Part shown: positions 3,728-63,908 of the stretch, piece by piece
Position numbering within the stretch: position 1 is the stretch's first letter
How the letters are laid out: each line of letters begins with the position of its first letter
Assembly: GCF_039654945.1 (NCBI RefSeq)
Contig: NW_027361679.1
Location: forward strand, 37,758,001-37,822,000
DNA length: 64,000 nucleotides
Source: Dendrobates tinctorius
Taxonomy: Eukaryota
Direction of reading: 5' to 3'
Program-made: the position numbers and the translations under genes
Notes under the pieces: model-generated
Databases searched by the model: none
Seen by the model: only the letters and a program-made list of their open reading frames with translations
Told to the model about the DNA's origin: nothing

Positions 3728-4170
3728 GGCTAGTTTCACACTAGCGCTTTTGAGTGCAGCGACGGCCTGCGCACGGCCGCCGCTAAGCCCCGCCCCCTGC
3801 CACGCCTCCGCCGGTAGCTCCGCCTACCGGCGCATGACGCTGCATGCGTCCTGCGTCCCCTATCTTTATCACTGGGGGCACAGTCTGCGTTTGGCAGCGC
3901 ATGCGTCCTTTTGACGGTGCGCCGAGCGCAACCAAACTGCAGCAGGTTGCGTTTGGCGCAGGTCGGCGCACCGTCAAAAGGACGCATGCGCTGCCAAACG
4001 CAGACTGCGCACGGCCTGCGCCCCAGTGATAAAGATAGGGGACGCAGGACGCATGCAGCGTCTTGCGCCGGTAGGCGGAGCTACCGGCGAAGGTGCAGCA
4101 GGGGGCGGGGCTTAGTGGCGGCCGTGCGCAGGCAGTCGCTGCGCTCAAAAGCGCTAGTGTGAAACTAGCC
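3728..4170. mobile_element. Palindromic PIF/Harbinger-type MITE
   Basis: TIR GGCTAGTTTCACACTAGCGC and its reverse complement; TTA TSD; removing it restores the Gypsy codons KPLTDLT. Confidence 0.9.
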
Positions 4171-4530
4171 TTACTGACCTCACACATAAGGGAGCGAATC
4201 TTAAGGTTTGGTAGTTGGATGCTGTTGACTTCTTTGATAAATTAAAGGAGTGCTTCATGTCTGCTCCAGTTTTGATTCAACCCAATCTCCAGAAACCATT
4301 TATCGTAGAGGTAGATGCCTCACAGGTTGGGGTAAGGGCTGTTTTGTCTTAAGGTTCCAAAACTCTAACCAACTTGCGACCATGTGCATTTTTCTGTAGG
4401 AAATTTTCGTCTCGTGAGAGAAATTATGATGCTGGGAATTGTGAGCTGTGAGCTGCGAGCTGTTATGCCAGCGTTTGAAGAATGAGGACTTTTTTGGAGG
4501 GAGCTATTCATCCGGTTACTGTGGTAACAG

Positions 4531-47500: not shown

Positions 47501-50500
47501 TAAAAATGACTGCTACATTTGTAAAACTCCTAAAAGGCTAACAAAATAAAAGAACATTTTACAAATGGTGCTGATGTAAAGCCGACATGTGGGAAATGTT
47601 ATTTATCAATGCTTTTGTGTGGTATGACTATCTGGATTAAAGGGATAATCATTCCAAGTTTGAAAATTGCAATTTTGTTTTACATTTTTGTCAAATTTCT
47701 GATATTTTTTATAAATAAACACAAAACATATAGAAATAAATTTACATTAACAAAGTACAACATGTCACTAAAAACAATCTCAAAATCATTGGGATCTGTT
47801 GAACCATTCCAGAGTTATTACATCATAAAGGGACACTGGTCAAATTTCTAAAATTTGGCCCTATCACTAAGGCACCGTCAAGCTACGCTGTTATCCGTGA
47901 CAGCGTGACAGCATAGCGTGTTACTAAAGGTAATGTTTGAGACTGTGGTCTCAATTCTCTTCAGGTCATTGACCAGGAACTCCCATGCAGTTCTGGGCTT
48001 GTTCCTGACCTTTCCCAGAATTGGTGGAGATGTTGGAGTGTGACTGAGTGTGTGGACAGGTGTTTTTTTACAGGTAACGAGTTCAAACAGGTGCAGTTAA
48101 TACAGGTAATGAGTGCAGCGTAAAAGGGTTTCTTAAAGAAAACTAACGGGTCTGCGAGAGCCAGAATTCTTGCTGGTGATCAAATACTTATTTCATGCAA
48201 TAAAATGCAATTTAATTAAGTAAAAATCATTCAACGTGATTTTCTGGATTTTTTTTCAAATTCTGTCTCTCACAATAGAAGTGAAAAAATTACAGACCTC
48301 TGCATTTTTGTAGGTGGGAAACTTGCAAAATTGGCAGTGTATCAAATACTTATTTTCACCACTGTATGTCACACAAAATAGTTAATAAATAACATCTACC
48401 ACATGTCTACATCTGTATCATTTTTTAAACTTTTTTTTTGGAAGTTAAAAGGGTTAAATTTTGATCAGCAATGTCTCATATTTCCATCAAAATTTACAAA
48501 ACCTTTTTTTAGAGCCACATCAAAATTTAAGTGGCTTTGGGGGCCTATATGATAGAAAATACCAAAAGTAATACCATTCAAAAAACTGCACCCCTGAAAG
48601 TCCCCAAAACCACATTCAATAAGTTTATAAACCCTTCAGGTGTTTCACAGGAATAAATGGAATGTGGAAGGGAAAGAAAATACATTGTGCTTTTTTTTCA
48701 CAAAAATTTTTCTTTAGCTCAAAACTTTTTATTTTCACAAGGGTAATAGGAGAAAATGCACCATACAGTTTGTTGTGCAATTTCTCCTGAGTACGCCAAT
48801 ACCTAATATGTGGAGTAAAACTACTGTTTGGGCGCACAGTAGAGCTCGGAAGGGAAGGAGCACCATTTAACTTTTTGAATGCAAAATTTGCTGAAATCAT
48901 TAGCGGACACCATGTCGCGTTTGGAAAGCCCCTGTTGTGCCTAAATAGTGGAAATCCCCCACAAGTGACCCCATTTTATAACTAGACCCCTCAATGAATG
49001 TATCTAGATGTGTGATGAGCACTTTGAACCCCAAGGTGATTCACAGAGTTTTATAATGTAGAGCAGTGAAAAATGTTCGTTTTGACTCAATTTTTTTATT
49101 TTAACAAGGATAATAGGAGAAAATGGAACTCAAAATTTGTTGTGCAATTTTTCCAGAGTTCGCAGATGCCACATCTGTGGGGGAAAACTACTGTTTGGGA
49201 GCACAGCAGGACTTAGAAAGGAAGAAGTGACGTTTTGGAATGCAGACTTTGGTGGAATGTCTGTGAGCGTCATGTCATGTTTGGAGAGCCCCTAATGTGC
49301 CTAAACAGTGAAACCACCCCACAATTACCCAGTTTTAGAAACTAGACCCTGATGGACCTGAGTGAGGACTTGCATGTTTTGTGGCTTGAGTTGAAGCATT
49401 TGTTGGGAACATTTTACATAACATTTTGGATCACATTTATCTGGCGCTCTACACTGAGCACTTACTTTGGGGTTTCCATCTAAATCTTAGAATGATGTGA
49501 TTCAGATGAAACCCTGAGGGATCCATTCACTATAATGAGACAGCAGAGTTTCTCTGGACTCTGTCTGGCCTCTGTTCAACAGTCTCCTTTTCAGAGGTGC
49601 ACAAAACTGAGGTTGACTATATTTTTATGCATGCCTAAAAAGAGGGACACCGCCAGATCATAGGCCAAGCAGCGTCAACTCTGTCCCCACCTGCCTCATT
49701 ATAGGGAATCTTCTGGCAGGGGCTTTCTGAATCACGTATTCCAGAGATTTACACTGAAACCGTGGTGTAAGCACTCAGCGTAGACCACAGGATAAATGTG
49801 AGCCGAGGCTTACCACAATCTTTGCAAGGCAGAATGAAAAAGTCAGCAGCAGGTGAAGAATTTTTATGATTTATTTATTTTTTTCTTTAAATCAAAATAA
49901 AGCTTTTTTTTAACAAAAAAAGTCATAGAAAGTTATATTCCACTTCCATGGTGCTATGTAGTATAACAGAAATATAATAATGTGGTATAATATAAAGCAA
50001 ATAGAGCAGGCTGTAGGCTGACATATATTAAAAACTCGTTCATACGTGTCCCTTCTCTGTCACTGTTCTCCTGCCATAAAGTGATTGTTCACTTATGAAC
50101 ACCATTTGAGACTTAATATAGTTATAGGGCTCACATGACAACTTTTTTCTTTTAAATTAAAATATGCAAATAAACATTTTTATGACAAGTACAAATCTAA
50201 AAAAAGAGAAAATCAAAAGGTATAAGTGACATATTAAAGTGCACACAGCAAGTAGTAGAGGATGGACCCATAAAAGTCCCAGAGTTCTGCCTCAGAACTT
50301 CTTCTTAGTATTTCAGATTGAGGTGTTTAGGCATTTCAGAGCGCGAACAGCATTCTTTCTACTGGTAATCATTATGTAAGAACACATCAGTTGTGCTACT
50401 GGTATTGTGCAGGACACTTACTTTGTGCAGTGTCCAATGAAAAGGTCACACTTACCAGAATTGACAAACAGAAAAAATATTAATTCTATATAATTATAAT

Positions 50501-53500
50501 TCAATATAATTTCTATATATATAATTACCCATTATTTTTGCTACCCATAAACCATTTCCTGCTGTTACATGCTGGTATGTATGTGTGTTGCAAAGAGTCT
50601 CCTTTTTTCTATTTCCATGAGCTTTGTTATCCATATTCTGTAAGCATATTCTCACACACTTCATGGCATATCATTTTTATCATTTGCAGAACTTACATTC
50701 CAGTCTGCTTGAGGTTCTCTATAGAAACAGATCAGACCTGGAAACAATATTTCGGATTATTGATAGTGACAGCTCAGGTGAGTATGAGTGTTGCATCTAT
50801 CAATAACAGGTATGCATTATGCTAATATTTTTATTTGTAGTGGTGCCGATAGACCTCTGCTGTACTAACAGTTCTACTGGAAAAAAAATCAGAAGAAACT
50901 TGGATGTAATATTTGGCTAAAAAGGAGTACTAAAGTATTCATGCTTCATATTGGATGATACACTTCCTGTGGCTCTCAGGATGCTCAGGCTGTAGGATGG
51001 TTTTGTAGGCTATGTTCACATCATGTTTTAGCCACTGAAAAACAGGATTCAGGCATATCCACCAACAAGGCCAGTGACTTTAATAAAGCAGATTGATAGA
51101 CTTTGTGCTCTGTCTGACACCCTTTTCCAGATGGGTACAAAAAAAGTGGTTGACTGCATTTTTTTGACCAGGGCCGGTACAAAGTACTTTGGTGCCCGAG
51201 GCATATGAAACCAAAGGCACGCTCCCAACCCACCACAAAGCAAAGGAATGGCTCAGAGACAACGGTAACAGAAACACTAATTCTAATCCCCCTTCCCCTC
51301 TGAAGGGTTAGGTAGAAAACTCTGATGATCACTTCCACTAGTATTGTTACTTTTTTCACAATTTTTTTTTAATCAAAAGTAAAAAAATGTGGTGTACTTT
51401 ATGGATGTGAGTTTACAGGGAGTGCAATTTCAAAGTTAGATACAGATATTCATCCCTGAAAGCCTATATTTTAAATGTAGAACCCAAAGATAGTTATGGA
51501 AGATAATAAAGAGTAACTATAATTGGGGTATTTTGGTTTCAATTAAGGTGTTCAGCAAATACTCTAATGGAAAATGAGCAAACCCCCATTATAAATAAAA
51601 TGGATACGTATAATGGTTTTTGCATCTGTCATGCAACAAATACAGCTTGTACACTGATGGTAGTTCTGGTGATATATTCATGTGGCGATTGTTGTTTTGG
51701 TGCTGTATTCATGTACGGTTGATGATTCTGGTGATATGTTAACCCCTTAGTGAAACCCTTTTTGCAGCTTAATGACCAGGCCAATTTTTACAATTCTGAC
51801 CACGGTCACTTTATGAGGCTATAACTCTGGAACTCTATAACGGATCCCGCTGATTCTGAGATTGTTTTTCTCGTGACATATTGCACTTCATGCTAGTGGT
51901 AACAATTCTTCGATATGACTTGTGTTTATTTATGAAAAAAACGGAAATATGGCAAAAACATTTAACATTTTGCAATTTTCAAACTTTAAATTTTTATGCC
52001 CTTAAATCAGAGAGATATGTCACATAAATTACTTAATAAATAACATTTCCCACATGTCTACTTTACATCAGCACAATTTTGGAAACAATTTTTTTTTTTA
52101 ATTAGGAAGTTATAAGGGTTAAAAGTTGACCAGTGATTTCTCTTTTTTACAACAAAACTTAGAAAACCATTTTTTTAGGGACCACATCACATTTAAAGTC
52201 ACCTTGAGGGGTGTACATGACAGAAAATATGCAAAAGTGACACCATTCTAAAAACTGGACCCCTCAAGGTGCTCAAAACCACATTCAAGAAGTTAATTAA
52301 CCCTTTATGTGCTTCACAGGAACTGAAGTAATGTGGAAGGAAAAAATTAACAATTAACTTTTTTTCCCCAAAAATTTACTTCAGAACCAATTTTTTTTAT
52401 TTTCACAAGTGTTGAAAGAGAAAATGAACCCCAAAAGCTGTTGTGCAATTTGTCCTGAGTATGCCAATACCACATATGTGAGGGTAAACCTATGTTTGGG
52501 TGCACGGCAGAGCTCGGAAGGGAAGAAGCGCTGGTTTGACTTTTTCAATGCAGAACTGGCTGGAATTGAGATCGGATGCCATGTTGCCTTTGGAGAGCCC
52601 CTGATGTGCCTAAACAGTGGAAACCCCACAAGTGACACCAATTTGGAAACTAGACCCCCTACTGAACTTATCTAAATGTGTGGTGAGCACTTTGAACCCC
52701 CAAGGGCTTCACAGAAGTTTATAAAGTAGAGCCGTGAAAAAATATATATATTTTTCCCACAAAAATGATCTTTTCGCACCAAAATTTTTATTTTCACAAG
52801 GGTAACAGGAGAAAATAGACCACAAAAGTTGTTGTGCAATTTATTCTGAGTACGCCAATACCCCATATGTGGAGGCAAACCACTGTTTGCGTGCACGGTA
52901 GAGCTCAGAAGGGAAAGAGTTCCGTTTTGGAATTTAGACTTTGATGGAATGGTCTGCGGGCATCATGTTGAGTTTGCAGAGCCCCTGATGTGCCTAAACA
53001 GTAGAAACCCCCACCAAGTGACCCCATTTTGGAAACTAGACCCCCCAAGGAACTTATCTAGATGTGTTGTGAGAACTTTTAACCCCCAAATATTTCACTA
53101 AAGGTCATAACGCAGAGCTGTGAAAATAAAAAATCATATTTTTTTCCCACAAAAATGATTTTTTAGCCCGCAATTTTTTATTTTCACAAGGGTAACAGGA
53201 GAAATTGGACCCCAAAACTTGTTTTCCAAATTGTCCTGAGTACGCTGGTACCCCATATGCGGGGCGGGGGGGACCACTTTTTTTTAAGCACACGTCGGAG
53301 CTCGAAAGGGAAGTAGTGACTTTTGGAATGCAGACTTTGATTAAATGGTCTGTGGACATCATGTTGCATTTGGAGAGCCCCTGATGTGCCTAAACAGTAG
53401 AAACCCCCCCACAAGTGACCCTATTTTGGAAACTAGACCAACCAAGGAGCTTATCTAGATGTGTGGTGAGCTCTTTGAACCCCCTAGTGTTTCTCAGAAG

Positions 53501-56500
53501 TTTTTAATGCAGAGCCGTTAAAATGAAAAATCTTTTTTTTTTTAGCCCCCAATTTCTTATTTTCTAGACCCCCTAAGTTGTTGTGCAATTTGCCCTCAGT
53601 ACGCTGATGCCCCATATGTGGGGGAAACCACTGTTTGGGCGCACGGCAGAGCTCAGAAGGAAGGGAGCACTGTTTGATTTTTTTGAGCGCAAAATTGGCT
53701 GGAATCAATGGTGGCGCCATGTTGCGTTTGGAGACCCCCTGATGTACCTAAACAGTGGAAACCCCTCAATTCTAACTCCAACCCTAACCCCAACACATCC
53801 CTAACCCTAATCCCAACCATAACCCTAACTCCAACACAGCCCTAACCCTAATCCCAACCCTAACCATAACCCTACTCACAACCCTAACCCCAACCCACTC
53901 CTAACCCTAATCCCAACCCTAAGGGTATGTTTCCACTCTGCGTGCTGGCAGTGCTTTGGACGCAGCGGATACTCGGCTCCGCTCAAAGAGCTTCCAACTT
54001 TTGTACGCGCGGTGATTCCAGATGTATTCATTGAACACATCCGGAATCACCGCATCCTATCCATAGACTGGGTTATTTATCTTGCAGAAGGAGTGTCTCC
54101 GCAAGATAAATAGACATGCTGCGGTCTTGAAAAAAAATATATAAAGTGCTCTCAGTGAGAGAAACTAAATAGGAATCTTGTGGGTATGATACCTTTTAAT
54201 GGCTAACAAATAATAGTGAATGATGTTACAAAGCAAACTTTCGAGACAACTTATGTCTCTTCATCAGGCTGATATAACAAAATATTTGAAGAAACCTTAT
54301 TTATATACAGTGGAGAGTACATGCATGGTGTGATACATGGACATTTCAATAAACAAACACTGAGCTTGAAGAGAGAATCCTTAATTAGGTAAGATTAGAT
54401 AAGTGGTGTGAAAGTTCTGTAAGATCAATGGGCTATTTGGAGGAAATAGCTCAGATATAGTAATAAAACCTCCTGACAGATTGGGCCCTGTGTGAATAGA
54501 ATCAAAGATTGTAATGAATTTGTGTTCCCACACCCTGCGATGTTTCTGTGATTTAAAATTGCCTTTTAAAATGACAACTTTCATATTGTCTATGTTGTGT
54601 CCTGGACCACAGAAATGTTTGGCCACAGGTAAATGCGTTTTTTTGTCTGTTATTGTATGACGATGAGACCTCATCCTTGCTCTCAGTCTCTGTTCTGTTT
54701 CTCCAACATAGAGGCCACCAACAGGACATATATTGCATAGAATTAAATACACAACATTCGAAGAGGAACATGTGAATGTCCCAGGGATCTTATAGCCCTG
54801 CTGTGTGTTGGGGATTTGGATTTTGTCTTTGGTCTCTATATGAATGCAGGTTTTGCATCTTCTCCCATTGCAAGGATATGTTCCTCTTGGTGAATCTGAG
54901 GGCATTGAACATAGGATAATGATAATGATGTTTATTAGATTGGGAGGTTGCCTGTAACAGCAAGGGGGGGTCTTTGAATAGTATTTTAACCAGTCATCCT
55001 TGTGTAGGATATGGTGAAGTTTTTTAGCCATTTTTCTCAGTATTTCAAGCAGTGGGTTGGGTTGTAGATCACTACCAGAGGTACACGATGATTTTCCTCT
55101 TTTTTTCTGTATTGAAGTACTTGACTTCTAGGGATCCTTGTTGCCCTAACGATCTGATCATCAATGGAGGTGGGATGGTAACCTTGATTTAAAAATGACA
55201 TTTTAAGCTGGTGTGTTCTTGAAAGACCTGCAGCATGTCTATTTTCGGGTGTGACACCCGCGCCCCTGCACACATAGTGGAGACTGGATTTCATAAAATT
55301 CCCTCCACTATGCTGTATCATCTGGACTCTGCAGATTGAACACTACGTGGAAACATATCCTAATTCCAACCCTAACTTTAGCCCAATTGTAACCCTAATG
55401 GAAAAATGGAAATATATATTTTTTATTTTATTATTTTTCCCTAACTAAGGGGGTGATAAAGGGGGGTTTTATTTACTTTTTTATTTTGATCACTGTGATA
55501 GGGTTTATCACAGTGATCAAAATGTACCTGGAATGAATCAATGGAATCTGCTGGGTGCCGGCCATGCGCATGCGCCCGCCATTATCTTTACAGGGAGAAG
55601 ATGCCGGGAGCCGTGGGAGGACCGGGGGTGGGGACACCGGGAAGTAGGGGGGACAGATCGGGGGACCCAGGGACTCCCTTTCTCTCCCCTCTGATGTGCG
55701 ATCACATCAAAGGAGAAAATAAATGCGAAATTGCGGCTTTTTTGTTGCGGTCGCCATTGCACGGTTAATAACGGCGATCGCAACACCGGGGTCGGTAAAT
55801 ACCGACCCGAATCATGTTCTCTGGGGTCTCGGCTACCCCCGGCAGCCAAGACCCCGGAGAAATTCCAACTCTGGTGGGCACTATTTACTTTTTCCATCAT
55901 CAGTTCATGAATATGAAGCCAAAATCATCATCAGTATATAATTAGCGCACCAGAGCCATCAATAGTATATGAATAAGGCACCAGAAACAACATCAGTAAA
56001 TAAATACATCACCAGAACCAACGTGAGTACTTGAATGTCACCAAAACCACCATCAGTAGATGAATATGTCACCAGAACCACCATTAGTACATGACTGCAT
56101 CACTAGATCCATCATCAGTACATGAACACATCAACAGACCCATCATCAGTACTTTACTAAGTCACCAGCACCATCATCAGTACAATAATATGTCACCAGA
56201 ACCACCATAAGTATAAGAATACATGACCAGAACCAAGAGCACTTGAATAAAAGAACCAAGCTTAGTACAAAGATCAATTGTAACATCAAGACAGTCCCAT
56301 AAACAATTGTATCACATGAACTCACAACCCTACAACTCCCATTATGTCCTTAACAATTGTAAAGAGATACTGGAAGTTTTTATTAACAGCCATCATCAGA
56401 TTGTGGGCAATACATAAAGCACAGTATTGATGAGAATTAGTCAGTATCACAAATAAACATTTACATCCAAGTACCTTATACCAGTGTTGTGCAAATTAAT

Positions 56501-59500
56501 TGGGACAAAGCATTTTTTTAAGTAAAATCGTCAGTTGGTTACCAGTCAGTGATTCAAACCAGTTTTAACTGCTTTAAACAGGTGTGAGTGTAGATTACCT
56601 CTTTTCTGGAGTCATCTTTTTCTTTTCATCTCCATCTTGTCTAGATGCCATGATGAGTTTTCACATCCACAGCTTTTCTCTGCAGACCTCCCGCTTCTCC
56701 AATCTTTTGCAGCACATCCCAACACAGTGAGCTTGCAAACAGTGTTATTAAAATGCCCTCTGCATAAAAATATGTCCACATTATTATTACAATAAATCTC
56801 CTATAGTATATGGCCTCCACACTGTCTACCATTATCAGCTATAACCGCCACACCATCTGCCCTTATGAGCCATATCCTATATCCATGGCTGTCCCCTCTC
56901 TAATTTTCTATTACACTTTCTATATCTCCACACTGTCCTCCTCCATGCTAACCCCTCTCCATATTGTGCCTCTATTTCATGCTGTCCCCTCTCCATATCC
57001 ATTCTGTGCCCCTTTTCATACTATGCCTTCATACTGCCCACCACGCTGCCCTCTTCATACTGTAACCACTCCTCACACTCACCCTACACAGTATGATGGC
57101 CACGCATACCGTATGATATCCACAATCCCCCCCAATATATGATATGGTCTCCACCACAGACCCCCCCCCATAAATAGTATGATGTCCAATACAGCCTCCA
57201 TGTATACTATGATGGTCCCCACAACATCTCAGAGTATTATGGCCCATAAATAACACCCCAAACAGTATGATATTCACCACAGCTCCCAATACAGTATGGT
57301 TTCTACAGCTCCTTGTATACTTTGCTGTCCCCCCCTTCACAGCTCATTTCATGGGCCTGTTTATTCCCCCCATCAGCACAGCCCCTTAGTTTATTGCCCC
57401 ATATACACAACAGCACATTTTATCTCCCCTCTGCACATCTCCTCAGTTTATTACCCCATTTATAATAATAATAATTTTATTTCTATAGTGCCATCATATT
57501 CTGCAGCACTTTACATTTTAGAGGGGACTTGTACAGACAATAGACATTACAGCATAACAATAAATATGGTAAGCACAATAACCAAGCCCATTATCCTTCA
57601 AAGGAGCGGGCTACACTCTCAATGCACAAATATATCACAAAGGTTATGTCACTGTCAGGTGACCCAATAACCAAGAGTGTCACTCATTTCATAAAATACA
57701 TGTTTTATTAAACATTAATTGACAAACAACCATAAAACCATTGCCTCAAACCAACAGTTATAGGAAGGAGAAACAGCAAAAGGATACAAATTCAATTATA
57801 TAATGAGTCAAAATTTAAAGAAAATGACTACAGTATCCTGAATAATATAATATGCCCAACAATATACTTAGTATTTATTGATTAGATACATTTTTAATAA
57901 AACTATAGAAAATTGCATGCAAAAAACCTGCATAGGTGTGAATAAAATTTACTGCCTTAATTTGAATAGAATCTAACACACAATTCACACCATTGAAAAA
58001 CTATTCATTAATCAGCTGTTCCTGCTGCTACACCACCATAGCATGGCTGTAGAAAATTGCATGCAAAAACCTGCATAGATGTGAATAAAATTTACTGCCT
58101 TAATGTGACCCCCAGGAAGAAGCACGGGCGAAACGCGCGCTGGGGTGCGGGGAAGCAGCATCCTACTCTATGCCTAACTCCACTGTGCACACTGCTTAGG
58201 TAATATGTATTTGGCCATTCATTCATCACATTTATTTTCATGCTTTGGGTCATTTTAGCCTGCATACATGAGAGGCTGTGGTAGCGCTGTAGCAGCAATG
58301 GCTGCATATATTGCATATTGTGGGTGATTAGAATCCACATATGTGTAAGGCTATGGTGGTGTAGCAGCAGCAATAGCTGATTAATGAATAGTTATTTAAT
58401 GGTGTGAATTGTGTGTTAGATTATATTCAAACCAAGGCAGTATATTTTATTCACATCTATGCAGGTTTTTGCATGCAATTTTCTACAGCCATTTAGCCCT
58501 GTTGTATCTAATTAAAGATACTAAGTATATTGTGGGGCATATTATATGTGTAAAGCTATGGTGGTGTAGCAGCAGCAACAGCTGATTAATGGTGTGAATT
58601 ATGTGTTAGATTCTATTCACATTAAGGCAGTAAATTTTATTCACATCTATTCAGGTTTTTGCATGCAATTTTCTGCAGCCATGTGTAAGGCTATGGCGGT
58701 GTAGCAGCAGCAACAGCTGATTAATGAATAGTCATTCAATGGTGTGAATTATGTGTTAGATTCTATTCACATTAAGGCAGTAAATTTTATTCACATCTAT
58801 GCAGGTTTTTGCATGCAATTTTCTGCAGCCATGTGTTAGGCTATGGCGGTGTAGCAGCAGCAACAGCTGATTAATGAATAGTTATTCAATGGTGTGAATT
58901 ATGTGTTAGATTCTATTCAATTTAAGGCAGTAAATTTTATTCACGCCTATGCAGGTTTTTTGCATGCAATTTTCTATAGTTTTATTAAAAATGTATCTAA
59001 TCAATAAATACTAAGTATATTGTTGGGCATATTATATTATTCAGGATACTGTAGTCACTTTCTTTAAATTTTGACTCATTATATAATTGAATTTGTATCC
59101 TTTTGCTGTTTCTCCTTCCTATAACTGTTGGTTTGAGGCAATGGTTTTATGGTTGTTTGTCAATTAATGTTTAATAAAACATGTATTTTATGAAATGAGT
59201 GACACTCTTGGTTATTGGGTCACCTGACAGTGACATAACCTTTGTGATATATTTGTGCATTGAGAGTGTAGCCCGCTCCTTTGAAGGATAATGGGCTTGG
59301 GTATTGTGCTTACCATATTTATTGTTATGCTGTAATGTCTATTGTCTGTACAAGTCCCCTCTAAAATGTAAAGTGCTGCAGAATATGATGGCACTATAGA
59401 AATAAAATTATTATTATTATTATAAATGGGGTAATAAACTGAGGAGCTGTGCAGAGGGGAGATAAAATGTGCTGTTGTGTATATGGGACAATAAACTGAG

Positions 59501-62500
59501 GGGCTGTGCTGATGGGGGGAATAAACAGGCCCATGAAATGAGCTGTGAAGGGGGGGACAGCAAAGTATACAAGGAGCTGTAGAAACCATACTGTATTGGG
59601 AGCTGTGGTGAATATCATACTGTTTGGGGTGTTATTTATGGGCCATAATACTCTGAGATGTTGTGGGGACCATCATAGTATACATGGAGGCTGTATTGGA
59701 CATCATACTATTTATGGGGGGGGTCTGTGGTGGAGACCATATCATATATTGGGGGGGATTGTGGATATCATACGGTATGCGTGGCCATCATACTGTGTAG
59801 GGTGAGTGTGAGGAGTGGTTACAGTATGAAGAGGGCAGCGTGGTGGGCAGTATGAAGGCATAGTATGAAAAGGGGCACAGAATGGATATGGAGAGGGGAC
59901 AGCATGAAATAGAGGCACAATATGGAGAGGGGTTAGCATGGAGGAGGACAGTGTGGAGATATAGAAAGTGTAATAGAAAATTAGAGAGGGGACAGCCATG
60001 GATATAGGAAATGGCTCATAAGGGCAGATGGTGTGGCGGTTATAGCCTGACAGTGACATAACCTTTGTGATATAACAATAAATATATAGATCAAAACAGA
60101 TACCAAGAGGAATGAGGGCCCTGCTCGCAAGCTTACAATCTATGAAGAAGGGGAGACACGAAAGGTGGATGGTAACAATTGCTTTCATTGTTCGGACCAG
60201 CCATAGTGTAAGAATCAGGTGTTCATGTAATGCTGCATGAACTGGTTATCAGCCAAAGTATCTAACAATACAGACACAGAGGGCTATTAAATGCATAAAG
60301 CATGTGAGAACATGATACGAGGAACCTGGTTACGGTAAAAATTTTGAATGGGCAACACAGGGATAGTTAAGTTAATGCGTTGAGGCGGTAGGCCAGTCTG
60401 AACAAATGCGTATTTAGGGCATGCTTAAAACTGTGGGGATTGGGGATTAATCGTATTAACCTGGGTAGTGCATTCCAAAGAATTGGCACAGCACATGAAA
60501 AGTCTTGGAGACGGGAGTGGGAGGTTCTGATTTATTGAGGATGCTAACCTCAGGTCATTAGCAGAACAGAGGGCACGGGTAGGCTGAGACGAGGGTGGAG
60601 ATGTAGGGTGGTGCTGAGCCATGGAGAGCTTTGTGGGTGAGAGTGATGTTTGTATTGGACATTGGAGTGGTTGGCTAACCAGTGTAATGACTGGCATTTG
60701 CACAGCCTATCATTTTATTCCCCCATCTGCACAGCCCCTCATTTTATTACCCCATCTGCACAGCCCCTCATTTAATTTCCCCATTTGCCCAACCCCTCAT
60801 TTTATACACCCCTGTGCGCAGGTCCTCAGTTTAACCCCATGTACACAGCTCATCATTTTTCCCACCTTCCCCCATCAACACAGACCTTCAGTTTATAACT
60901 CTCCTCTGAAACAGCCCCTCAGTTTATTCCCCCCATCAGCACAGTCCCTTGCCTGTTTTCCCCCCCATCAGCAGTCTCTCACCTCAATTTAATCCCCCAT
61001 CAGCACACCCCCTCATTTTATTCTCACTTTCCCCTCATCAGCACAGCCCTTCAGTTTATTCCCCCCATCAGCACAGTCCCTTGCTCCAGTTTATTCCCCC
61101 ATCAAGTCTCTCACCCCATTTTAATCCCCCATCAGCATGGCCCCTCATTTTTATTCTCCTCTTCCCCTCATCAGCACAACTCCTCAGTTTATTCCCCAAT
61201 CTGCAGTCCCTCACCTCATTTTATTCCCCCATCAGCAATCTCTCAATTCATTTTAATCCCCCATCAGCACAACCCCTCATTTTATTATCCCCTTCCCCTC
61301 ATCAGCACAACTCCCTTTTATTCCCATGAGCACAGTCCCTCACCTAATTTTAATCGCTATATCAGCCAGCCCATTTTATTCTCCCCTTGCCATCATCAGA
61401 ACTGCCCCTCAGTTTATAACCCATCAGCACAGCCCCTCACCTCATTTTATCTCTATCTGCTCAGCCCCTCCCCTTAGCTGTCCACATAATCTCAGCGCAA
61501 TGACATCACTGCACTGCACCATCCAACATCTCCTATGTGCGCCTTCTCCAACAAGGCACAGACCTGAAGTGGGCCCTCGTCTTGCTGGATATTCCGGCGG
61601 AGCAGGGGACCTGACAGCTCCTGTCACAGCCGGCACACAGACGAGAATGCAATTGAGAGCAGGGAGGTAGCAACAGCTGGGGCACAGGAGAGGGGTGAGC
61701 GGTGTCAGCGACTCACCTGCAAGCCTGCGCCCCAGCAGTAACCATGCTGAATGTGTGCGGCCACGGGATGTTGGTGACTGCAGACATTCAGCAATTTTTT
61801 TTCACAATGTGCCCCCCTCACATTGGTAGGAGGTGGCGCCCTGTTTGTGCCCACCTGAGAAAGGCGGACACTTCAGAAATTTACATTAGACAGAGCCCAA
61901 AGTAACTCCATCTGCTTCACTAACGTGAATGGTCTTTTTGGCAGATATACCTGAATCCTGTTTTTCAGCAGACCCTTAGGCAAGTCATCCTCTATTCCTT
62001 GGGGTATAGGCCGGTGTTCCTCTACAATGGGTAATTTATTCTTTGGTTAATGTTTCATGATTTTTCTGGGGGTGGTGCAGTGAAGCCTCTTTTTTACAAG
62101 GAAATTTTTCCAACATTGCTTTATTAGAGGCTTTTTCTGCTCCCCTTCATACGGGATAAGAAAAGTGTCCAAAATATCAACATAAACTTGTGCATTTATT
62201 GAAGATGTAATGAAATGACAGCCATCTCCCAAGTGCCTTTACCTGACATGCAGCCCCATATCATCAATGACTGTGGAAATTTACACGTTCTCTTCAGACA
62301 TTCATCTTTAGAAAATCTCATTGGAACGGCACCAAACAAAAGTTCCAGCATCATCACTTTGTCCAACGCAGATTCGCGATTCATAACTGAATATGACTTT
62401 CATCCAATCATCCACAGTCCATGATTGCTTTTCCTTAGCCCACTGTAACCTTGTTTTATTCTGTTTAGGTGTTAATGATGGCTTTCGTTTAGCTTTTCTG

Positions 62501-63908
62501 TATGTAAATCCCATTTCCTTTAGGCGGTTTCTTACAGTTCGGTCACAGACGTTGACTCGTTTCCTCACATTCGTTCCTCATTTGTTTTGTTGTGAATTTC
62601 CTGTTTTGGAGACGTATTGCTTTAAGTTTCCGGTCTTGATGCTTTGATATTGACCTTGGTCTAACAGTATGTTTGCCTTTAACAACCATCCCATGTTGTT
62701 TGTATTTGGTCCAGATTTTAGACACAGCTGACTCTGAACAACCAACATCTTTTGCAACATTGCATGATGATTTACCCTCTTTTAAGAGTTTGATAATCCT
62801 CTCCTTTGTTTTAATTGACATCTCTCATGTTGGAGCCATGATTCATGTCAGTCCACTTGGTACAACAGCTCTCCAAGGTGTGATCACTCCTTTTCAGATG
62901 CAGACTAACGAGCAGATCTAATCTGATGCAGGTGTTAGTTTTGGGAATGAAAATTTACAGGGCGATTCCATAATTTTTTCCTTCAGAATTGAGTGATTCC
63001 ATAATTTTTTCCCTATGCTTGGATAAAAAAAGTAACCATTACTGACTACCACATTTTTTGTTCTTGATTTCTTTTAGTGTTTCTTAAAGCCAGAAAGTTA
63101 CCATTTGAAATGACTTTAGTTTTGTGCCATGTCTGTGATCTGCTTTTTTTTCTACAAAATTAAACAACTGAATGAACATCCTCCAAGGCCGGTGGTTCCA
63201 TAATTTTTGCCAGGGGTTGTACTTTGGCTGCTACAGCTTGTAGAAGTCTCATGGGTAGTAATGCTTATGTGACATTTCTAAAAGCGTATATTATTGTGTT
63301 GAGGCATCAGTAATGCTTGTACTGGTGATATTGTGACCTCTGGTGTAATTATTGCAACATGTAATATACGGCTGTGTTCCCCACAGTAGGGGTCATTGTT
63401 CTATGGAGTATTATATGGCATGCGGCCATTGGGAGGAGTTATGAATTGCTTGCATTTACTAGAAAAAGAGCTACTTTTACCAAGCCATTTTCCTTTCTGG
63501 CTCACAGAAGGGGTTACTGCCACTAATCCGTGACCCAGTTGGGCATGTGACAAGTGGTTGTCCTGGAGAGAGCATTTCAATGATCATTGCCAGGACTGTG
63601 GCCTTGCTAAAACGCAGATAAGATTACATGTACTGCTCATTCTCAAATTCCTTTTTCTTCACTATTTTGTAAATTTACCTTTAAAGTTTAACTGGAATTT
63701 TGTTTCAGGACATATTTCATTTGAGGAATTCAAACACACATGGAAACTGCTGAGCTCACACTTAAAAATAGATGTCAGCGATGAAGCCATCTGTAACATG
63801 GCTAAGAGCATGGACTTCAATAAGGATGGTAATATAGACATCAATGAATTCCTGGAGGCTTTCCGACTGGCTGACAGACCTAATATTGAAGACAGAGAGG
63901 ATTTTTGA
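17393..63908 (+). CDS. ppef2: Ser/Thr protein phosphatase with EF-hands 2 (PPEF2/rdgC family), 5'-partial, 10 exons in window
   Basis: Ten GT-AG exons splice in phase into one ORF. It carries the PPP motifs GDFVDRG, RGNHE, HGG, DILWSDP, IRSHE and SASNY, a long catalytic-domain insert typical of PPEF2, and C-terminal EF-hands ([26 protein letters not shown]). Confidence 0.93.
17641..17677 (+). CDS. ppef2: ppef2 short exon ([12 protein letters not shown])
   Basis: 37 nt, gag acceptor, gtatgt donor; restores phase; YGF motif follows RGNHE in PPP phosphatases. Confidence 0.9.
17958..18361. mobile_element. Palindromic Harbinger-like MITE (same family as 30524-30916, opposite orientation)
   Basis: Imperfect TIRs, TAA/TTA flanks, internal GCGATATCGC palindromes. 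Confidence 0.75.
18607..19032. mobile_element. Tc1-derived MITE consisting almost entirely of long TIRs
   Basis: CAGTGCCTTGCAAAAGTATTC...GAATACTTTCGCAAGGCACTG; TA TSD. Confidence 0.9.
19971..20120 (+). CDS. ppef2: ppef2 exon (FHGKKILK...WLPLATVID...HGGVS...ERHK)
   Basis: 150 nt, aag acceptor, gtgaga donor; LPLA and HGG motifs. Confidence 0.93.
20417..28026 (-). mobile_element. Full-length but mutated Ty3/Gypsy LTR retrotransposon
   Basis: LTRs at 27229-28026 and 20417-21422; TATG TSD; PBS relic next to 27228; PPT at 21423-21433; gag, CCHC-like knuckle, protease (LLDTGS), RT (YLDD), RNase H and integrase broken by stops and frameshifts. Confidence 0.93.
21768..26894 (-). pseudogene. Disrupted gag-pol of the - strand Gypsy element
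   Basis: ORF pieces 26604-26894, 23882-26641, 23676-23885, 22725-23675 and 21768-22715 are colinear Gag-PR-RT-RH-IN. Confidence 0.9.
28500..29530 (+). mobile_element. Decayed Tc1-like transposon
   Basis: Relics [33 protein letters not shown] and [12 protein letters not shown] across broken frames. Confidence 0.7.
30524..30916. mobile_element. Palindromic Harbinger-like MITE
   Basis: GGTACTGTCACACTTAGCG...CGCTTAGTGTGACAGGCCC ends; reverse-complement homologue of 17958-18361. Confidence 0.75.
31743..32497. mobile_element. Probable solo LTR or similar GC-rich insertion in the DIRS gag region
   Basis: TGCAGTGAC...GTCACTAC inverted ends interrupt DIRS-like coding relics; no clear TSD. Confidence 0.45.
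35778..35787 (+). promoter_or_regulatory. Self-priming primer-binding site
   Basis: TATAATCGGC is complementary to GCCGATTATA at 35358-35367 in the LTR; there is no TGG tRNA-type PBS. Confidence 0.8.
35807..36658 (+). CDS. gag: Gag (capsid plus CCHC knuckle)
   Basis: [33 protein letters not shown]. Confidence 0.95.
   Translation: MDPLDSITRQLAALSIQVSELNGAVQQQGLVVAKVQTASAGIGAEPKFPLPERFSGDRSKFVVFREACKLYFRMRPISSGNEAQRVGLVLSLLSGDPQAWAFSLPPDSATFHSVDNVFSALGLIYDDPDRLALAESKIRALRQGERLAEDYCSEFRRWAVDTQWNDPALRSQFIHGVSGRVKQALLMYETPASLESAMSLVIRIDRRFRQGAQETLPLGENRGAGVVEVDESPEPMQIAGVAQVRPRAPGVRKSGACFYCGKGGHYVNVCPVLPKRVTPAENC
36646..36707 (+). promoter_or_regulatory. -1 ribosomal frameshift signal (G_GAA_AAC plus H-type pseudoknot)
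   Basis: Stem 1 GCTCAG-A-GGGT pairs with ACCC-AA-CTGAGC; loop ATGGAGG pairs with CCTCCAT at 36701-36707. Confidence 0.8.
36646..40023 (+). CDS. pol: Pol (protease, RT, RNase H, integrase, chromodomain) in the -1 frame relative to gag
   Basis: VDSGS, YLDD, VEVDAS, HHCC and DDE integrase motifs, GPF, chromodomain ([16 protein letters not shown]). Confidence 0.95.
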   Translation, partial: GKLLSSEGMEETQLSVCISSMMVSQCMLPAKVIVAGRELPISVFVDSGSATNLIDEEFAHTAGFKIEKLPHPIQVVTINAVPLPQGEITEFVAEVKLHIGVLHSESVTCRVLRNLPAQMVLGFPWLSRHNPVIDWKTQDIVQWSGFCQDNCLATCVSAVTPSLPEALQDFADVFSEKGCSELPPHRAYDCAIRLKPGAKLPKARMFNISGPERQALKDYIAESLSKGHIRPSSSPVAAGFFFIKKKDGGLRPCLDFRELNQITIRDPYPMPLIPDLFNQVAGAKWFSKLDLRGAYNLIRVRQGDEWKTAFNTPEGHFESLVMPFGLTTAPAVFQHFINDVFAHVLGRFVIVYLDDILIYSSDRDTHLQHVRQVLQLLRENQLYAKLEKCLFFVQELPFLGYIVSAAGFKMDTAKVQAVLQWERPESLKALQRFLGFANYYRKFIKHFSTVAKPLTDMTKKGADLANWPEVAIRAFERLKNSFASAPILVQPDVSKPFVVEVDASEVGVGAVLSQGSSLSEMHPCAYFSKKLSPAERNYDIGNRELLAIKLAFEEWRHFLEGAAHQVTVITDHKNLLYLESAKRLSPRQARWALFFTRFNFLVTYRPGAKNTKADALSRCFPGGEPREEPVPILQKGVVVSALTTEVEAEIAEAQEEVPPGLPANKSFVPLHLRPKVLKEHHDSVLAGHPGVKGTLELVSRRFWWPKIRQDVVSYVAACITCARAKSPRTRPAGTLQPLGVPNRPWTEISMDFITDLPASAGNTVILVVVDRFSKMAHFVALSSLPNAKTLAQVFVKEVVRLHGIPSDIVSDRGTQFVARFWKAFCSRLGIKLSHSSAFHPQSNGQTERMNQNLEQYLRCFVSDNQEEWSTFLPLAEFALNNHRQESSGESPFFCVYGQHPQFCTLRQGDSGGVPEEDQLGAQLSSVWRRVKQRLLSMSARYKRVADSRRVPGPDLCVGEWVWLATKNIKLKIPSLKLGPRFIGPFRISAIINPVAYRLELPAVYKIHNVFHRALLKKVVGSVDTTPMPPPVMVDGELEFEVAKVVDSRVVRRTLQYLVHWRGYGPEERSWVPASDIHADRLVSSFHRRHPDKPGPMSLEGPGVPRRRRGTVMSDAVHTTASGRQR
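41460..41858 (+). CDS. ppef2: ppef2 exon encoding the catalytic-domain insert (FTSTLRPRK...DEERKQ)
   Basis: 399-nt open frame between a tag acceptor and a gtattc donor, phase 0/0; its position matches the PPEF2 insert. Confidence 0.85.
43201..43386 (+). CDS. ppef2: ppef2 exon (IVDILWSDP...RGGGCYFG...IRSHE...HNGK)
   Basis: 186 nt, cag/gt boundaries, PPP motifs. Confidence 0.95.
43493..43744. mobile_element. hAT-like palindromic MITE
   Basis: TAGAGATGGG...CCCATTTCTA ends; 8-bp TSD TTACTAAT/TCACTAAT. Confidence 0.7.
44867..45009 (+). CDS. ppef2: ppef2 exon ([12 protein letters not shown]...TLRQ)
   Basis: 143 nt, tag/gt boundaries, SASNY motif. Confidence 0.95.
45094..45200 (+). CDS. ppef2: ppef2 exon ([19 protein letters not shown]...DKNKS)
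   Basis: 107 nt, cag/gt boundaries, in phase. Confidence 0.93.
45343..45506 (+). CDS. ppef2: ppef2 exon (HITLHDW...[12 protein letters not shown]...VRE)
   Basis: 164 nt, cag/gt boundaries, LPWR motif of the PPEF family. Confidence 0.93.
46034..48364 (-). mobile_element. Tc1-like transposon with a deleted transposase, itself interrupted at ~46918-47870
   Basis: TIRs CAGTGGGGAAAATAA...TTATTTTCACCACTG; TA TSD; [15 protein letters not shown] motif on the - strand. Confidence 0.88.
46918..47870 (-). mobile_element. Kolobok/T2-like element in reverse orientation inside the Tc1
   Basis: TTAACCCTTT end; 47300-47870 is reverse-complementary to the family's left arm. Confidence 0.6.
49428..49810. 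mobile_element. Palindromic Harbinger-like MITE
   Basis: TCACATTTATC...CTGAGCACTTAC pairs with GTAAGCACTCAG...GATAAATGTGA. Confidence 0.6.
50690..50777 (+). CDS. ppef2: ppef2 exon ([29 protein letters not shown])
   Basis: 88 nt, cag acceptor, gtgagt donor; start of an EF-hand. Confidence 0.93.
53771..53922 (+). repeat. Degenerate (CCCTAA)n telomere-like tract; continues at 55361-55400, with a homologous tract at 12001-12070
   Basis: ccctaa, cccaac and ccataa hexamers. Confidence 0.85.
54133..55216 (-). mobile_element. 5'-truncated Penelope-like retroelement (RT tail, GIY-YIG endonuclease, pLTR region)
   Basis: [17 protein letters not shown]...YVGET...R.RSH, HF...H; flanked by a TCTTGAAA duplication (54125-54132 and 55217-55224). 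Confidence 0.9.
54228..54275 (-). ncRNA. Minimal hammerhead-ribozyme-like motif of the Penelope pLTR
   Basis: - strand reads GC CTGATGA A GAGAC ataagtt GTCTC GAAA GTTTGC: intact core boxes and a 5-bp stem II; stem III is degenerate. Confidence 0.7.
55895..56260. repeat. ~32-bp degenerate tandem repeat (ACCAGAACCACCATCAGTACATGAATATGTC)
   Basis: About 11 units; reverse-complement units at ~51650-51738. Confidence 0.7.
56838..60046. repeat. Long near-perfect inverted repeat (arms ~56838-58020 and ~58850-60046)
   Basis: The arms are reverse complements with few mismatches; the ORF track shows mirrored translations. Confidence 0.95.
57462..60695 (-). mobile_element. L2-clade LINE 3' fragment split into 60072-60695 and 57462-57567
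   Basis: RT C-terminal relics ([22 protein letters not shown]); 3' UTR TAGATTGTAAGCTTGCGAGCAGGGCCCTC...TGTAAAGTGCTGCAGAATATGATGGCACTATAGAAATAAA followed by (ATT)n. Confidence 0.8.
57568..59314. mobile_element. Non-coding palindromic element with ~150-bp tandem units and a hammerhead-like motif (putative Penelope-dependent, retrozyme-like element)
   Basis: Ends GGTAAGCAC...GTGCTTACC; it interrupts an L2 3' UTR; units start at 58349, 58554, 58689 and 58839; motif at 58107-58147. Confidence 0.6.
60696..61480. repeat. ~30-bp C-rich minisatellite (CAGCACAGCCCCTCAGTTTATTCCCCCAT), continuing the array at ~57340-57461
   Basis: More than 20 degenerate units. Confidence 0.85.
62145..63219 (-). mobile_element. 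Tc1-like transposon, 5' part with a frameshifted transposase
   Basis: TIR CAACCCCTGGCAAAAATTATGG next to TA; HTH region [10 protein letters not shown]...; DDWMKVIFS(D>Y)ESR; [13 protein letters not shown]. Confidence 0.88.
63709..63908 (+). CDS. ppef2: ppef2 last coding exon (EF-hands, TGA stop)
   Basis: cag acceptor; HISFEEF and [17 protein letters not shown]; TGA at 63906-63908. Confidence 0.94.

What the first reader, a model, noticed from the sequence alone, without database searches (positions are those of the whole stretch)
56838..60085. Fold-back insertion: a non-coding element duplicated ~730 bp of flanking DNA in inverted orientation and left a templated junction
Seen: the original locus is an L2 3' UTR that reads continuously if 57567 is joined to 60086. 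ATAACAATAAATAT occurs at both 57554-57567 and 60072-60085, like a 14-bp TSD. Between them lie (a) a palindromic element at 57568-59314, (b) an inverted copy at 59315-60046 of the upstream flank 56838-57567, and (c) a 29-nt patch at 60046-60074 copied from inside the element (59223-59251) and joined through ATA microhomology. Inference: synthesis folded back, ran through the element end into host DNA, jumped templates twice and rejoined the target. This fits hairpin or template-jump priming by Penelope-like elements and would be a route by which such elements build host-DNA palindromes.
Basis: partly seen in the sequence, partly recalled or inferred. Interest (0 to 1): 0.82.

Follow-up and report, generated by a model that had tools for sequence, protein, structure and literature searches.

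The report
Fold-back copy of flank beside repeat
A non-coding repeat inserted into another repeat carries next to it a 1.1-kb back-to-front copy of its own end plus 730 bp of neighbouring DNA, sealed by a short copied patch: a clear natural case of a DNA end folding back and copying its own strand, which is a known repair route, so it is instructive rather than new.

Summary
The inverted-repeat arms are 56838-58108 and 58767-60046. ATAACAATAAATAT occurs only at 57554-57567 and 60072-60085, plus once reversed at 59315. The 29-nt patch 60046-60074 equals 59223-59251 and overlaps the 14-mer by ATA.

New here: the young inverted copy does not start at the element's end. It starts inside a 150-bp tandem unit at 58902-58919. 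From there to 60046 the arms differ by about 0.7%, equally in element and flank. Further in they differ by about 4% plus a 7-nt indel.

Best reading: a 3' end in the right-hand unit array annealed to the inverted units on the left of the same strand and copied about 1.1 kb. It snapped back once more for 29 nt and was captured through ATA by the other target end, probably during integration.

The element family is multi-copy in this species and absent from a relative. Other copies of the host repeat read straight across the insertion point.

Not supported: a hammerhead, and any demonstrated Penelope link. "L2" was not tested. The junction was found only in the sample that probably gave the assembly.

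It is a kilobase-scale natural example of hairpin-primed fold-back insertion. The same scan also noted the element separately (s1-364553).

The parts
56838..57567 (+). Left flank A, the template of the inverted copy. It is a 29-31-bp satellite-like repeat followed by the last ~105 bp (57462-57567) of a very high-copy repeat that ends in (ATT)n on the minus strand.
   Evidence: One search gives depth of 1e5 from 57387 on, and loose ends at the microsatellite (59423).
57554..57567 (+). Left copy of the 14-bp direct repeat ATAACAATAAATAT, the target-site duplication. Given the ATA overlap, 11-14 bp are actually duplicated.
   Evidence: only two direct copies in the window. joints show the family carries it once.
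57568..57906 (+). Outer (terminal) region of the inserted non-coding element, left side. It is AT-rich (31% GC).
   Evidence: One X20 contig matches 59204-59315 and then runs on for 64 unlike letters, so another copy ends at the same terminus (table 8, record 20).
57907..58108 (-). About 1.4 copies of the 150-bp unit in inverted orientation. This is the landing pad for the fold-back.
58109..58340 (+). Unpaired core of the element (48% GC). Its GC-rich start belongs to a wider repeat also present in organism B. No hammerhead was found.
   Evidence: no Rfam match; depth 84.7 in X5 at 58092-58232, and C>T at 58140 in all other contigs.
58341..58919 (+). Right-hand array of 150-bp units in direct orientation, pre-dating the event. 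It includes an older decayed 'unit plus about 55 nt of inverted outer arm' at 58341-58547.
   Evidence: An X1 contig 58455-58577 has depth 307 and 0 differences.
58902..58919 (+). Interval that holds the start of the young inverted copy tract. Sequence is neighbour-unit-like up to 58901 and left-arm-like from 58920.
   Evidence: three-way comparison., Fisher p = 0.0006 for outer against inner divergence.
58920..59314 (-). Inverted copy of the element's own left part (57568-57962), including the whole right outer arm.
   Evidence: 4 substitutions, the same rate as in the flank copy.
59315..60046 (-). Inverted copy of left flank A, including the reversed 14-mer at 59315-59328.
   Evidence: 4 substitutions and 2 repeat-length indels in 730 bp.
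60046..60074 (+). 29-nt templated patch, identical to 59223-59251 and to the reverse complement of 57631-57659. It overlaps the flank copy by 1 nt (C) and the 14-mer by 3 nt (ATA).
60072..60085 (+). Right copy of the 14-bp direct repeat.
60086..60700 (+). Right flank B, the continuation of the interrupted high-copy repeat. A 29-32-bp satellite follows it.
   Evidence: (joints, depth 1e5).

Best explanation
This is a real, one-off rearrangement made by hairpin-primed (fold-back) DNA synthesis at a broken target site, most likely while the non-coding element was being integrated.

1. The element (57568 to about 58910) entered an AT-rich site in a high-copy repeat. Its fixed terminus joined cleanly to the left target end.
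2. The growing top strand ended inside the right-hand array of 150-bp units.
3. Those units are complementary to the 1.4 inverted units at 57907-58108 on the same strand. The 3' end folded back, annealed there, and was extended along its own strand.
4. Extension first copied the element's outer region (now 58920-59314), then the 14-mer and 730 nt of left flank (now 59315-60046).
5. The new strand came off and snapped back once more on the same template at 57659-57631 through one C, copying 29 nt.
6. Its terminal ATA paired with the last three bases of the 14-nt overhang of the other target end. Fill-in and ligation restored the chromosome and left the 11-14-bp duplication.

Shown: the anatomy, the junction microhomologies, the position where the copy starts, the equal divergence of element arm and flank, and the family's copy number and terminus. 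Inferred: the order of events, the timing (at integration), and which polymerase (element-borrowed RT or host) did the copying.
For: - The arms, the 14-mer and the patch are exact at the stated places.
- Divergence is 4/730 in the flank and 2/369 in the element outer arm (p = 1). It is 7/172 plus a 7-nt indel in the inner units (p = 0.0006).
- The right terminal unit matches its tandem neighbour up to 58901 and the left arm from 58920 on. One tract therefore covers element arm plus flank and begins in a unit.
- The right junction sits exactly on the first bases of the second 14-mer, as expected if that end was the unprocessed target overhang.
- The left junction is clean and the right junction is composite, which is the polarity of target-primed insertion.
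- The element family is multi-copy in organism A: summed depth is 600-1900 against 5-18 for contigs that match the flanks without differences. It is absent in organism B. One contig shows another copy ending at the same terminus.
- Other copies of the host repeat are continuous across the site (table 5).
- An older, family-wide junction of the same type (a unit followed by inverted outer arm, then a jump back to a unit start) lies at 58341-58547. It is 86.6% identical to 58831-59037, and a contig over it has depth 307.
- The strand 57568-58915 is strongly self-complementary, with MFE of -306 kcal/mol.
- Mechanistic precedents exist: a hairpin-primed copy unwound and captured by the other break end (PMC11724301); sequential hairpins (PMC7467729); cDNA self-annealing fold-backs at L1 sites (PMC11702581).
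Against: - No other full copy of the element could be fetched, so its native structure (one arm or two) and its mode of transposition are unknown.
- Arm-to-arm gene conversion could have equalised divergence.
- Tandem units may simply evolve faster than unique sequence.
- In the MFE fold of a strand cut at 58915, the left units pair with the penultimate register, not the terminal one.
- The junction words were found only in X1, the probable source sample, and not in two other runs of that sample. There is no independent confirmation.
- A 730-nt copy of duplex flank needs long 5' resection or bubble migration, which is unproven here.
Confidence: 0.45

Rival explanations
1. Post-insertion repair. 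A complete two-armed (foldback-type) element already sat here between two 14-mers. A later break at or near its right end, such as one-ended transposase cleavage or an aborted excision, was resected.
For: - The element has long inverted arms built partly of tandem subrepeats, like foldback transposons (Galileo/Foldback descriptions in PMC3573991).
- The older internal 'unit plus inverted outer arm' piece shows that a two-armed layout existed earlier in the family.
- Outer-arm depth is about 2.4 times core depth.
- The hairpin-then-capture chemistry is the same as in PMC11724301 and PMC7467729.
Against: - It needs a break exactly at the element/14-mer boundary, or loss of exactly the remaining element DNA.
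- An 11-14-bp duplication is longer than I know for cut-and-paste superfamilies (own knowledge).
- The young tract starts in the array rather than at 59314/59315. The outer arms would therefore have had to be identical beforehand.
Confidence: 0.28
2. Replication U-turn. A fork passing a pre-existing palindromic element switched template at the inverted repeat and copied back into already-replicated flank. It then returned by microhomology template switches (FoSTeS/MMBIR type) without a two-ended break.
For: The layout flank, element, inverted flank is what template exchange at inverted repeats yields. The 1-nt and 3-nt microhomologies and the 29-nt patch fit serial template switching.
Against: Nothing in this model makes the return land on the first base of the second 14-mer, with neither loss nor gain of element or target DNA. 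It also needs a pre-existing right arm that was identical to the left one.
Confidence: 0.08
3. Assembly or read artefact. This would be a false inverted duplication, for example the second haplotype folded in, or a chimeric palindromic long read.
For: - Arm divergence of 0.55% lies in the range of heterozygosity.
- Palindromes are hard to assemble.
- Junction words were found only in one run of the probable source sample.
- No listed contig spans the structure.
Against: - There are no Ns in the window.
- The path returns to the right flank through a 29-nt templated patch with 1-nt and 3-nt overlaps. Overlap-based assembly or a missed adapter would not create that.
- All five sampled junction words are present in the contigs of a read set.
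- The differences between arms are mostly substitutions.
- The chromovirus LTRs in the same window are 100% identical over 605 bp, so the base accuracy is high.
Confidence: 0.08
4. The whole palindrome 56838-60046 is itself a mobile foldback element with 1.27-kb terminal inverted repeats.
For: It has long near-identical inverted arms.
Against: The right flank continues the host repeat exactly from 57567, a point inside the left arm, and other family copies read straight through. There is no duplication at 56838/60046, and no second copy in the window.
Confidence: 0.02

Closest known systems
Local templated fold-back inversions at double-strand breaks (yeast; PMC11724301), and hairpin-mediated foldback inversions (PMC7467729)
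   Same: One end folds back on an inverted repeat near the break and primes synthesis on its own strand. [quoted passage not shown] Two successive hairpins have been seen.
   Different: Here the primer stem is an imperfect repeat of about 140-200 nt with a loop of about 660 nt, not a 4-15-nt stem. The copy is about 1.1 kb, not 2-150 bp. The event is germline, in a vertebrate-type genome, at a transposable-element junction that keeps a target duplication.
L1-associated foldback junctions and twin priming or template-switch insertions (PMC11702581)
   Same: A target-primed 3' end self-anneals and gives an inverted junction beside an insertion. The 5' junction shows microhomology, templated pieces and 12-18-bp duplications.
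   Different: The L1 cases are unresolved chromosome-scale foldbacks or inversions of the inserted cDNA only. Here the fold-back was resolved in cis to the reciprocal target end and duplicated host flank. There is no poly(A) and no L1.
Penelope-like element insertions with inverted 5'-truncated copies, proposed self-priming and a 30-40-bp 'tail' (PMC8557442, PMC3846280)
   Same: The insert has an inverted-repeat layout and a short extra piece of about 30 nt at one end. The target is AT-rich and next to a microsatellite, and the duplication has variable length. Self-priming and template jumps have been proposed for these elements, as has capture of host DNA.
   Different: - There is no RT/GIY-YIG ORF and no hammerhead.
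- There is no similarity to the Penelope-like fragment in the window.
- The 29-nt patch is an internal segment, not an extension of the terminal repeat.
- The papers I read do not describe an inverted copy of target flank.
Foldback-type DNA transposons (Drosophila Foldback, Galileo, Tetris; PMC3573991, PMC4079207)
   Same: They have long terminal inverted repeats containing tandem subrepeats around a non-repeated core. They are non-coding and give rise to satellite-like arrays.
   Different: The duplication here is 11-14 bp, against 7-9 bp by my recollection. No transposase relative is known. At least the outer right arm here looks like a product of the event rather than a native end.

Membership tests
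Hairpin-primed fold-back insertion at a two-ended break | An inverted repeat able to form a stem on the strand that ends 3' at the break | tested here: met
   57907-58108 is complementary to units 58617-58975 at 92-96%. Strand MFE is -306 kcal/mol.
Hairpin-primed fold-back insertion at a two-ended break | The inverted copy is colinear with the template strand outward from the stem, as one continuous tract | tested here: met
   58920-60046 mirrors 57962-56838 with 8 substitutions and 2 repeat-length indels.
Hairpin-primed fold-back insertion at a two-ended break | Capture by the other end through 0-5 nt of microhomology, optionally with templated patches | tested here: met
   A 1-nt C at 60046, the ATA at 60072-60074, and the 29-nt patch.
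Penelope-like element, or a non-autonomous element mobilised by one | An RT plus GIY-YIG ORF, or a 3' end shared with an autonomous Penelope-like element | tested here: not met
   There is no ORF over 93 aa in 57568-59314. There is no similarity to the rest of the window, including the GIY-YIG-like ORF at 54384-55031. A genome-wide comparison was not possible.
Penelope-like element, or a non-autonomous element mobilised by one | A hammerhead ribozyme in the pseudo-LTR (canonical EN+ clades) | tested here: not met
   Rfam gives no hammerhead at E<=5 over 56000-61600, none at E<=10 over 58040-58360, and nothing at gathering score in the window.
Penelope-like element, or a non-autonomous element mobilised by one | Partial tandem or inverted 5'-truncated copies and a 30-40-bp tail | tested here: inconclusive
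   Inverted and tandem 150-bp units and a 29-nt end patch exist. However, the patch is an internal segment and the inverted arm carries host flank.
   Reading 58100-58150 by eye finds GAAAC but no CUGAUGA box on either strand.
Foldback-type DNA transposon | Long terminal inverted repeats with internal tandem subrepeats | tested here: met
Foldback-type DNA transposon | A short duplication of fixed length (7-10 bp) and both arms present in independent copies | tested here: inconclusive
   The duplication here is 11-14 bp. Other copies could not be fetched. Only one contig shows a shared terminus.
L2 LINE 3' UTR (the host repeat) | Continuity with an L2-clade RT ORF, or a match to an L2 consensus | not testable with these tools
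   No repeat library is available and no other copy lies in the window. What fits: very high copy number, and a 3' (ATT)n tail on the minus strand where other copies diverge (loose end at 59423).

The most novel reading that the evidence does not exclude
Hairpin self-priming on its own inverted 150-bp units is the regular way this non-coding family makes its second arm or second strand during target-primed integration, perhaps using a Penelope-like RT. Occasional overshoot into single-stranded target DNA would then be a recurrent, element-driven route that builds kilobase palindromes out of host sequence. The older family-wide 'unit plus inverted arm, then jump' junction at 58341-58547 would be a fossil of the same process.
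Probability: 0.15. Interest if true: 0.75.

Novelty: new member of a known kind. Interest (0 to 1): 0.45.

Why it matters
Fold-back inverted duplications are mostly known from yeast assays, tumours and large human copy-number variants, where the junctions are short or the outcome is a broken chromosome. This locus preserves a kilobase-scale event at base-pair resolution. The priming stem, the start of synthesis, a second snap-back and the capture by the reciprocal end can all be read. Such palindromes are themselves fragile and can give double-stranded RNA when transcribed. If the same pattern recurs at other copies of the family, it would give a testable handle on the poorly understood origin of inverted structures at Penelope-type insertions.

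Tried and rejected
1. **Hammerhead or retrozyme reading of the core.** Rfam found nothing on either strand.
2. **Other copies of the element in the window.** None.
3. **Other copies through the scan's notes by sequence.** Blank, which means nothing here.
4. **Other copies through a protein 'handle'.** The 93-aa chance ORF of the core gave no candidates, so the look-up of encoding contigs could not be used.
5. **Independent confirmation of the junction.** A search with 60017-60104, in which every 31-mer spans a junction, found it only in X1 of the probable source sample (after two busy errors). The single read-laying run was dominated by the high-copy repeat, and none of the few contig pieces it listed bridges the junction.
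6. **Empty allele.** Contigs with the form 57553->60072 exist in all four runs, including a relative. They cannot be told from paralogous copies of the host repeat.
7. **Pfam on the upstream GIY-YIG-like ORF.** No hit even at E<=10. Only the Atlas feature search points to GIY-YIG/RT clusters.
8. **Whole palindrome as a mobile element.** Rejected because the host repeat continues from inside the left arm.
9. **The 29-nt patch as a remnant of an original right arm.** Rejected as needing two extra events.
10. **DNA fold of 57568-58915.** The strand is strongly self-complementary, but the best fold uses the penultimate register, so it does not pin down the primer position.


Full report
**1. What is in the sequence**

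The region was read directly and compared with itself and with the whole window. The window holds one large young inverted repeat, 56835-58108 against 60050-58767, at 98.05% over 1285 aligned columns. No second copy of the inner sequence 57568-59314 lies elsewhere in the 64 kb.

- ATAACAATAAATAT occurs at 57554 and 60072, and once reverse-complemented at 59315, and nowhere else in the window.
- The 29-mer 60046-60074 equals 59223-59251 and the reverse complement of 57631-57659, and occurs nowhere else.
- The patch shares its first C with the last base of the inverted flank and its last ATA with the first three bases of the 14-mer.

Joining 57567 to 60086 gives one continuous sequence.

**2. 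Continuity of the host repeat**

Reads support that continuity at the family level. Logan contigs of four runs were laid on 56400-60600. The stretches 57387-57567 and 60066-60600 have summed word depths of about 1e5. Many contigs skip from 5755x-5756x to 6007x-6009x, for example 57553->60072 with 10-13 ambiguous letters, or 57564->60088 with CAC between. Other genomic copies of this repeat are therefore uninterrupted at this point and carry the 14-mer region once.

Other copies diverge at the (ATT)n run (loose end at 59423). The family thus ends there on the minus strand of the original locus. That is what a CR1/L2-type LINE tail looks like (my own knowledge). The name 'L2' could not be tested.

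**3. The inserted element**

The element is non-coding; its longest chance ORF is 93 aa. Its layout is:

| Coordinates | Part |
|---|---|
| 57568-57906 | Outer region, 339 bp, 31% GC |
| 57907-58108 | 1.4 inverted copies of a 150-bp unit |
| 58109-58340 | Unpaired core, 232 bp, 48% GC |
| 58341-58975 | About 4.2 direct copies of the unit |
| 58976-59314 | Outer region again, inverted |

In run X1 the interior has a summed depth of 600-1900. Contigs that match the flanks without differences have depths of 5-18. The interior is also present in two other samples of the same species (X18, X20). It is absent from organism B (X5), except for the GC-rich start of the core. The element is therefore a multi-copy, lineage-restricted family.

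One X20 contig matches 59204-59315 and then continues for 64 unlike letters. At least one other copy therefore ends at the same terminus, which supports 57568/59314 as a true family end.

Rfam finds no hammerhead or any other family here, in three searches:
- at E<=5 on 5.6 kb;
- at E<=10 on the 321-bp core;
- at gathering score on the whole window.

**4. Where the young copy begins**

| Segment (left-arm coordinates) | Substitutions | Other differences |
|---|---|---|
| Flank, 730 bp | 4 | 2 repeat-length indels |
| Element outer arm to 57936, 369 bp | 2 | none |
| Inner unit region 57937-58108, 172 bp | 7 | 7-nt indel |

Flank against outer arm gives p = 1.0. Outer against inner gives p = 0.0006.

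I then compared three sequences: the right terminal unit, its tandem neighbour 150 bp upstream, and the left arm.
- Up to 58901 the terminal unit agrees with its neighbour at every site where the left arm differs: 58825, the 7-nt block 58833-58839, 58847, 58861, 58884 and 58901.
- From 58920 onward it agrees with the left arm at every site where the neighbour differs: 58920, 58946, the extra T at 58956, and everything beyond.

The young inverted tract therefore starts between 58902 and 58919, inside a unit. It runs without a break through the right outer arm, the reversed 14-mer and the flank copy to 60046. That is about 1.13 kb with 8 substitutions.

The step in divergence is not at the element/flank boundary. 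The simplest reading is that the right outer arm and the inverted flank were made together.

**5. Mechanism**

The anatomy fits a single strand copying itself.
1. A top-strand 3' end lying in the right-hand array is complementary to the inverted units at 57907-58108 of the same strand.
2. Annealing there and extension give, in order, exactly what is found from 58920 to 60046.
3. The 29-nt patch is the complement of 57659-57631 on that same strand. It is most simply a second snap-back on the same single-stranded template after the nascent end came off at 56838, using 1 nt of homology.
4. The final ATA overlap lies on the first three bases of the second 14-mer. If the target was opened by nicks 14 nt apart, those bases are the 3'-terminal bases of the overhang of the reciprocal end. 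Annealing, fill-in and ligation would give the observed 11-14-bp duplication.

The left junction is clean and at the family terminus. The right junction is composite and microhomology-mediated. This is the polarity of target-primed insertion. It is my reason to prefer an event coupled to integration over a later break, because a later break would have to fall exactly at the element/14-mer boundary.

The strand 57568-58915 is strongly self-complementary when folded as DNA (-306 kcal/mol). The best fold of that truncated strand uses the penultimate register, so the fold does not fix the primer position.

**6. Evidence that such switching recurs in the family**

Inside the array, 58341-58547 is an older copy (86.6%) of 58831-59037. 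It is a unit followed by the first 55 nt or so of the inverted outer arm, after which the sequence jumps back to a unit start. An X1 contig covering exactly this junction (58455-58577) has depth 307 and no differences. The junction is therefore carried by many copies and belongs to the family's master sequence.

Either the family is natively two-armed, or fold-back copying has happened before in its history. This keeps the post-insertion rival and the novel reading open.

**7. Is it real?**

Arguments against an artefact:
- The window has no Ns.
- The arms differ mainly by substitutions.
- The LTRs of the chromovirus in the same window are 100% identical over 605 bp, so the consensus is accurate.
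- The way back to the right flank goes through a 29-nt templated patch with 1-nt and 3-nt overlaps. Neither overlap assembly nor a missed hairpin adapter would produce that.

I also searched public runs with 60017-60104, in which every 31-mer crosses one of the two junctions. All 5 sampled words are in X1, and none are in X3 or X25 of the same sample.
- X1 is probably the source of the assembly, so this is not independent support.
- In the first search each of these runs held only about half of the region's words. That fits low coverage per run.
- Absence from the other runs is therefore uninformative.

I put the artefact at about 8%.

**8. Comparison with what is known**

- **Yeast local fold-back insertions.** The chemistry is that described at double-strand breaks. 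One end folds back on inverted microhomology and a polymerase extends it. [quoted passage not shown] In that study the copies were 2-150 bp.
- **Yeast hairpin foldback inversions.** Hairpin-mediated foldback inversions with two successive hairpins are documented (PMC7467729).
- **L1 sites.** Self-annealing of the extended 3' end and template switching give foldback junctions and composite insertions with 12-18-bp duplications (PMC11702581).
- **Penelope-like elements.** Inverted 5'-truncated copies, a 30-40-bp 'tail', host-DNA capture and proposed self-priming are described (PMC8557442, PMC3846280).

The present case differs in four ways:
- scale, about 1.1 kb;
- use of a long imperfect inverted repeat supplied by the element;
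- inclusion of host flank;
- clean resolution to the reciprocal target end in the germline.

It is a new example of a known kind, not a new kind.

**9. The Penelope attribution**

A Penelope-like fragment does lie 2.5 kb upstream. The ORF 54384-55031 on the minus strand has the VVY...YVGET motif. Its Atlas feature score is 0.97 to GIY-YIG/HTH_animal/RVT_1 clusters, though Pfam itself gives nothing. Earlier notes of this scan report Penelope and hammerhead repeats elsewhere in the genome.

The element shares no sequence with that fragment. It has no hammerhead, and no autonomous partner could be sought. The link is a lead, not a finding.

**10. Limits**

- Other copies of the family could not be collected.
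- The single read-laying run was used on the whole region. Its listed output was dominated by the high-copy repeat.
- The empty allele, the frequency of flank inversions at other copies and the native structure of the element therefore remain open. They are the decisive tests.

Noticed in passing
window 54381-55321, minus strand: This looks like a 5'-truncated Penelope-like element. The 216-aa ORF carries a CCHH-like motif and VVY...YVGET (GIY-YIG-like), and a 94-aa ORF lies upstream. Pfam finds nothing even at E<=10. The Atlas feature search scores 0.97 to GIY-YIG/HTH_animal/RVT_1 clusters.
   Followed up: partly
window 58092-58232: The GC-rich start of the element's core belongs to a wider repeat. 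It is the only part of the element with depth in organism B (84.7), and it is raised in X18 (275). All other contigs read T instead of C at 58140. It is not a hammerhead by Rfam, and its nature is unknown.
   Followed up: partly
window 58341-58547: This is an older decayed copy (86.6%) of 'unit plus the first ~55 nt of inverted outer arm', followed by a jump back to a unit start. A contig over it has depth 307 with no differences, so it is a family-wide fossil of an earlier fold-back or template switch.
   Followed up: partly
window 62308-62821, minus strand: Two adjacent ORFs carry Tc1/mariner-type transposase HTH domains (HTH_Tnp_Tc3_2 at E 4e-13; HTH_23 and Sleeping Beauty HTH). This is a decayed Tc1-like transposon just right of the satellite.
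   Followed up: partly
window 3727-4171: A 445-bp stretch is its own reverse complement at 89%, an older perfect-centre palindrome of unknown origin.
   Followed up: no
window 35172-35776 and 39974-40578: A direct repeat pair is 100% identical over 605 bp. These are the LTRs of the chromovirus noted earlier (s1-364600). The identity shows that insertion is very young and that the assembly's base accuracy is high.
   Followed up: partly
window 57349-57460 and 60700-61470; also 55894-56235: The same 29-32-bp satellite (CCCCATCAGCACAGCCCCTCATTTTATT-like) lies on both sides of the interrupted high-copy repeat, so that repeat may be part of a larger composite unit. A separate 31-bp array lies at 55894-56235.
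   Followed up: no
window 9996-11999, 48365-49349, 51772-53829: Dispersed and tandem copies of a repeat of about 390 bp periodicity, at 75-83% identity, occupy several kb. They carry short ORFs of similar sequence on both strands.
   Followed up: no
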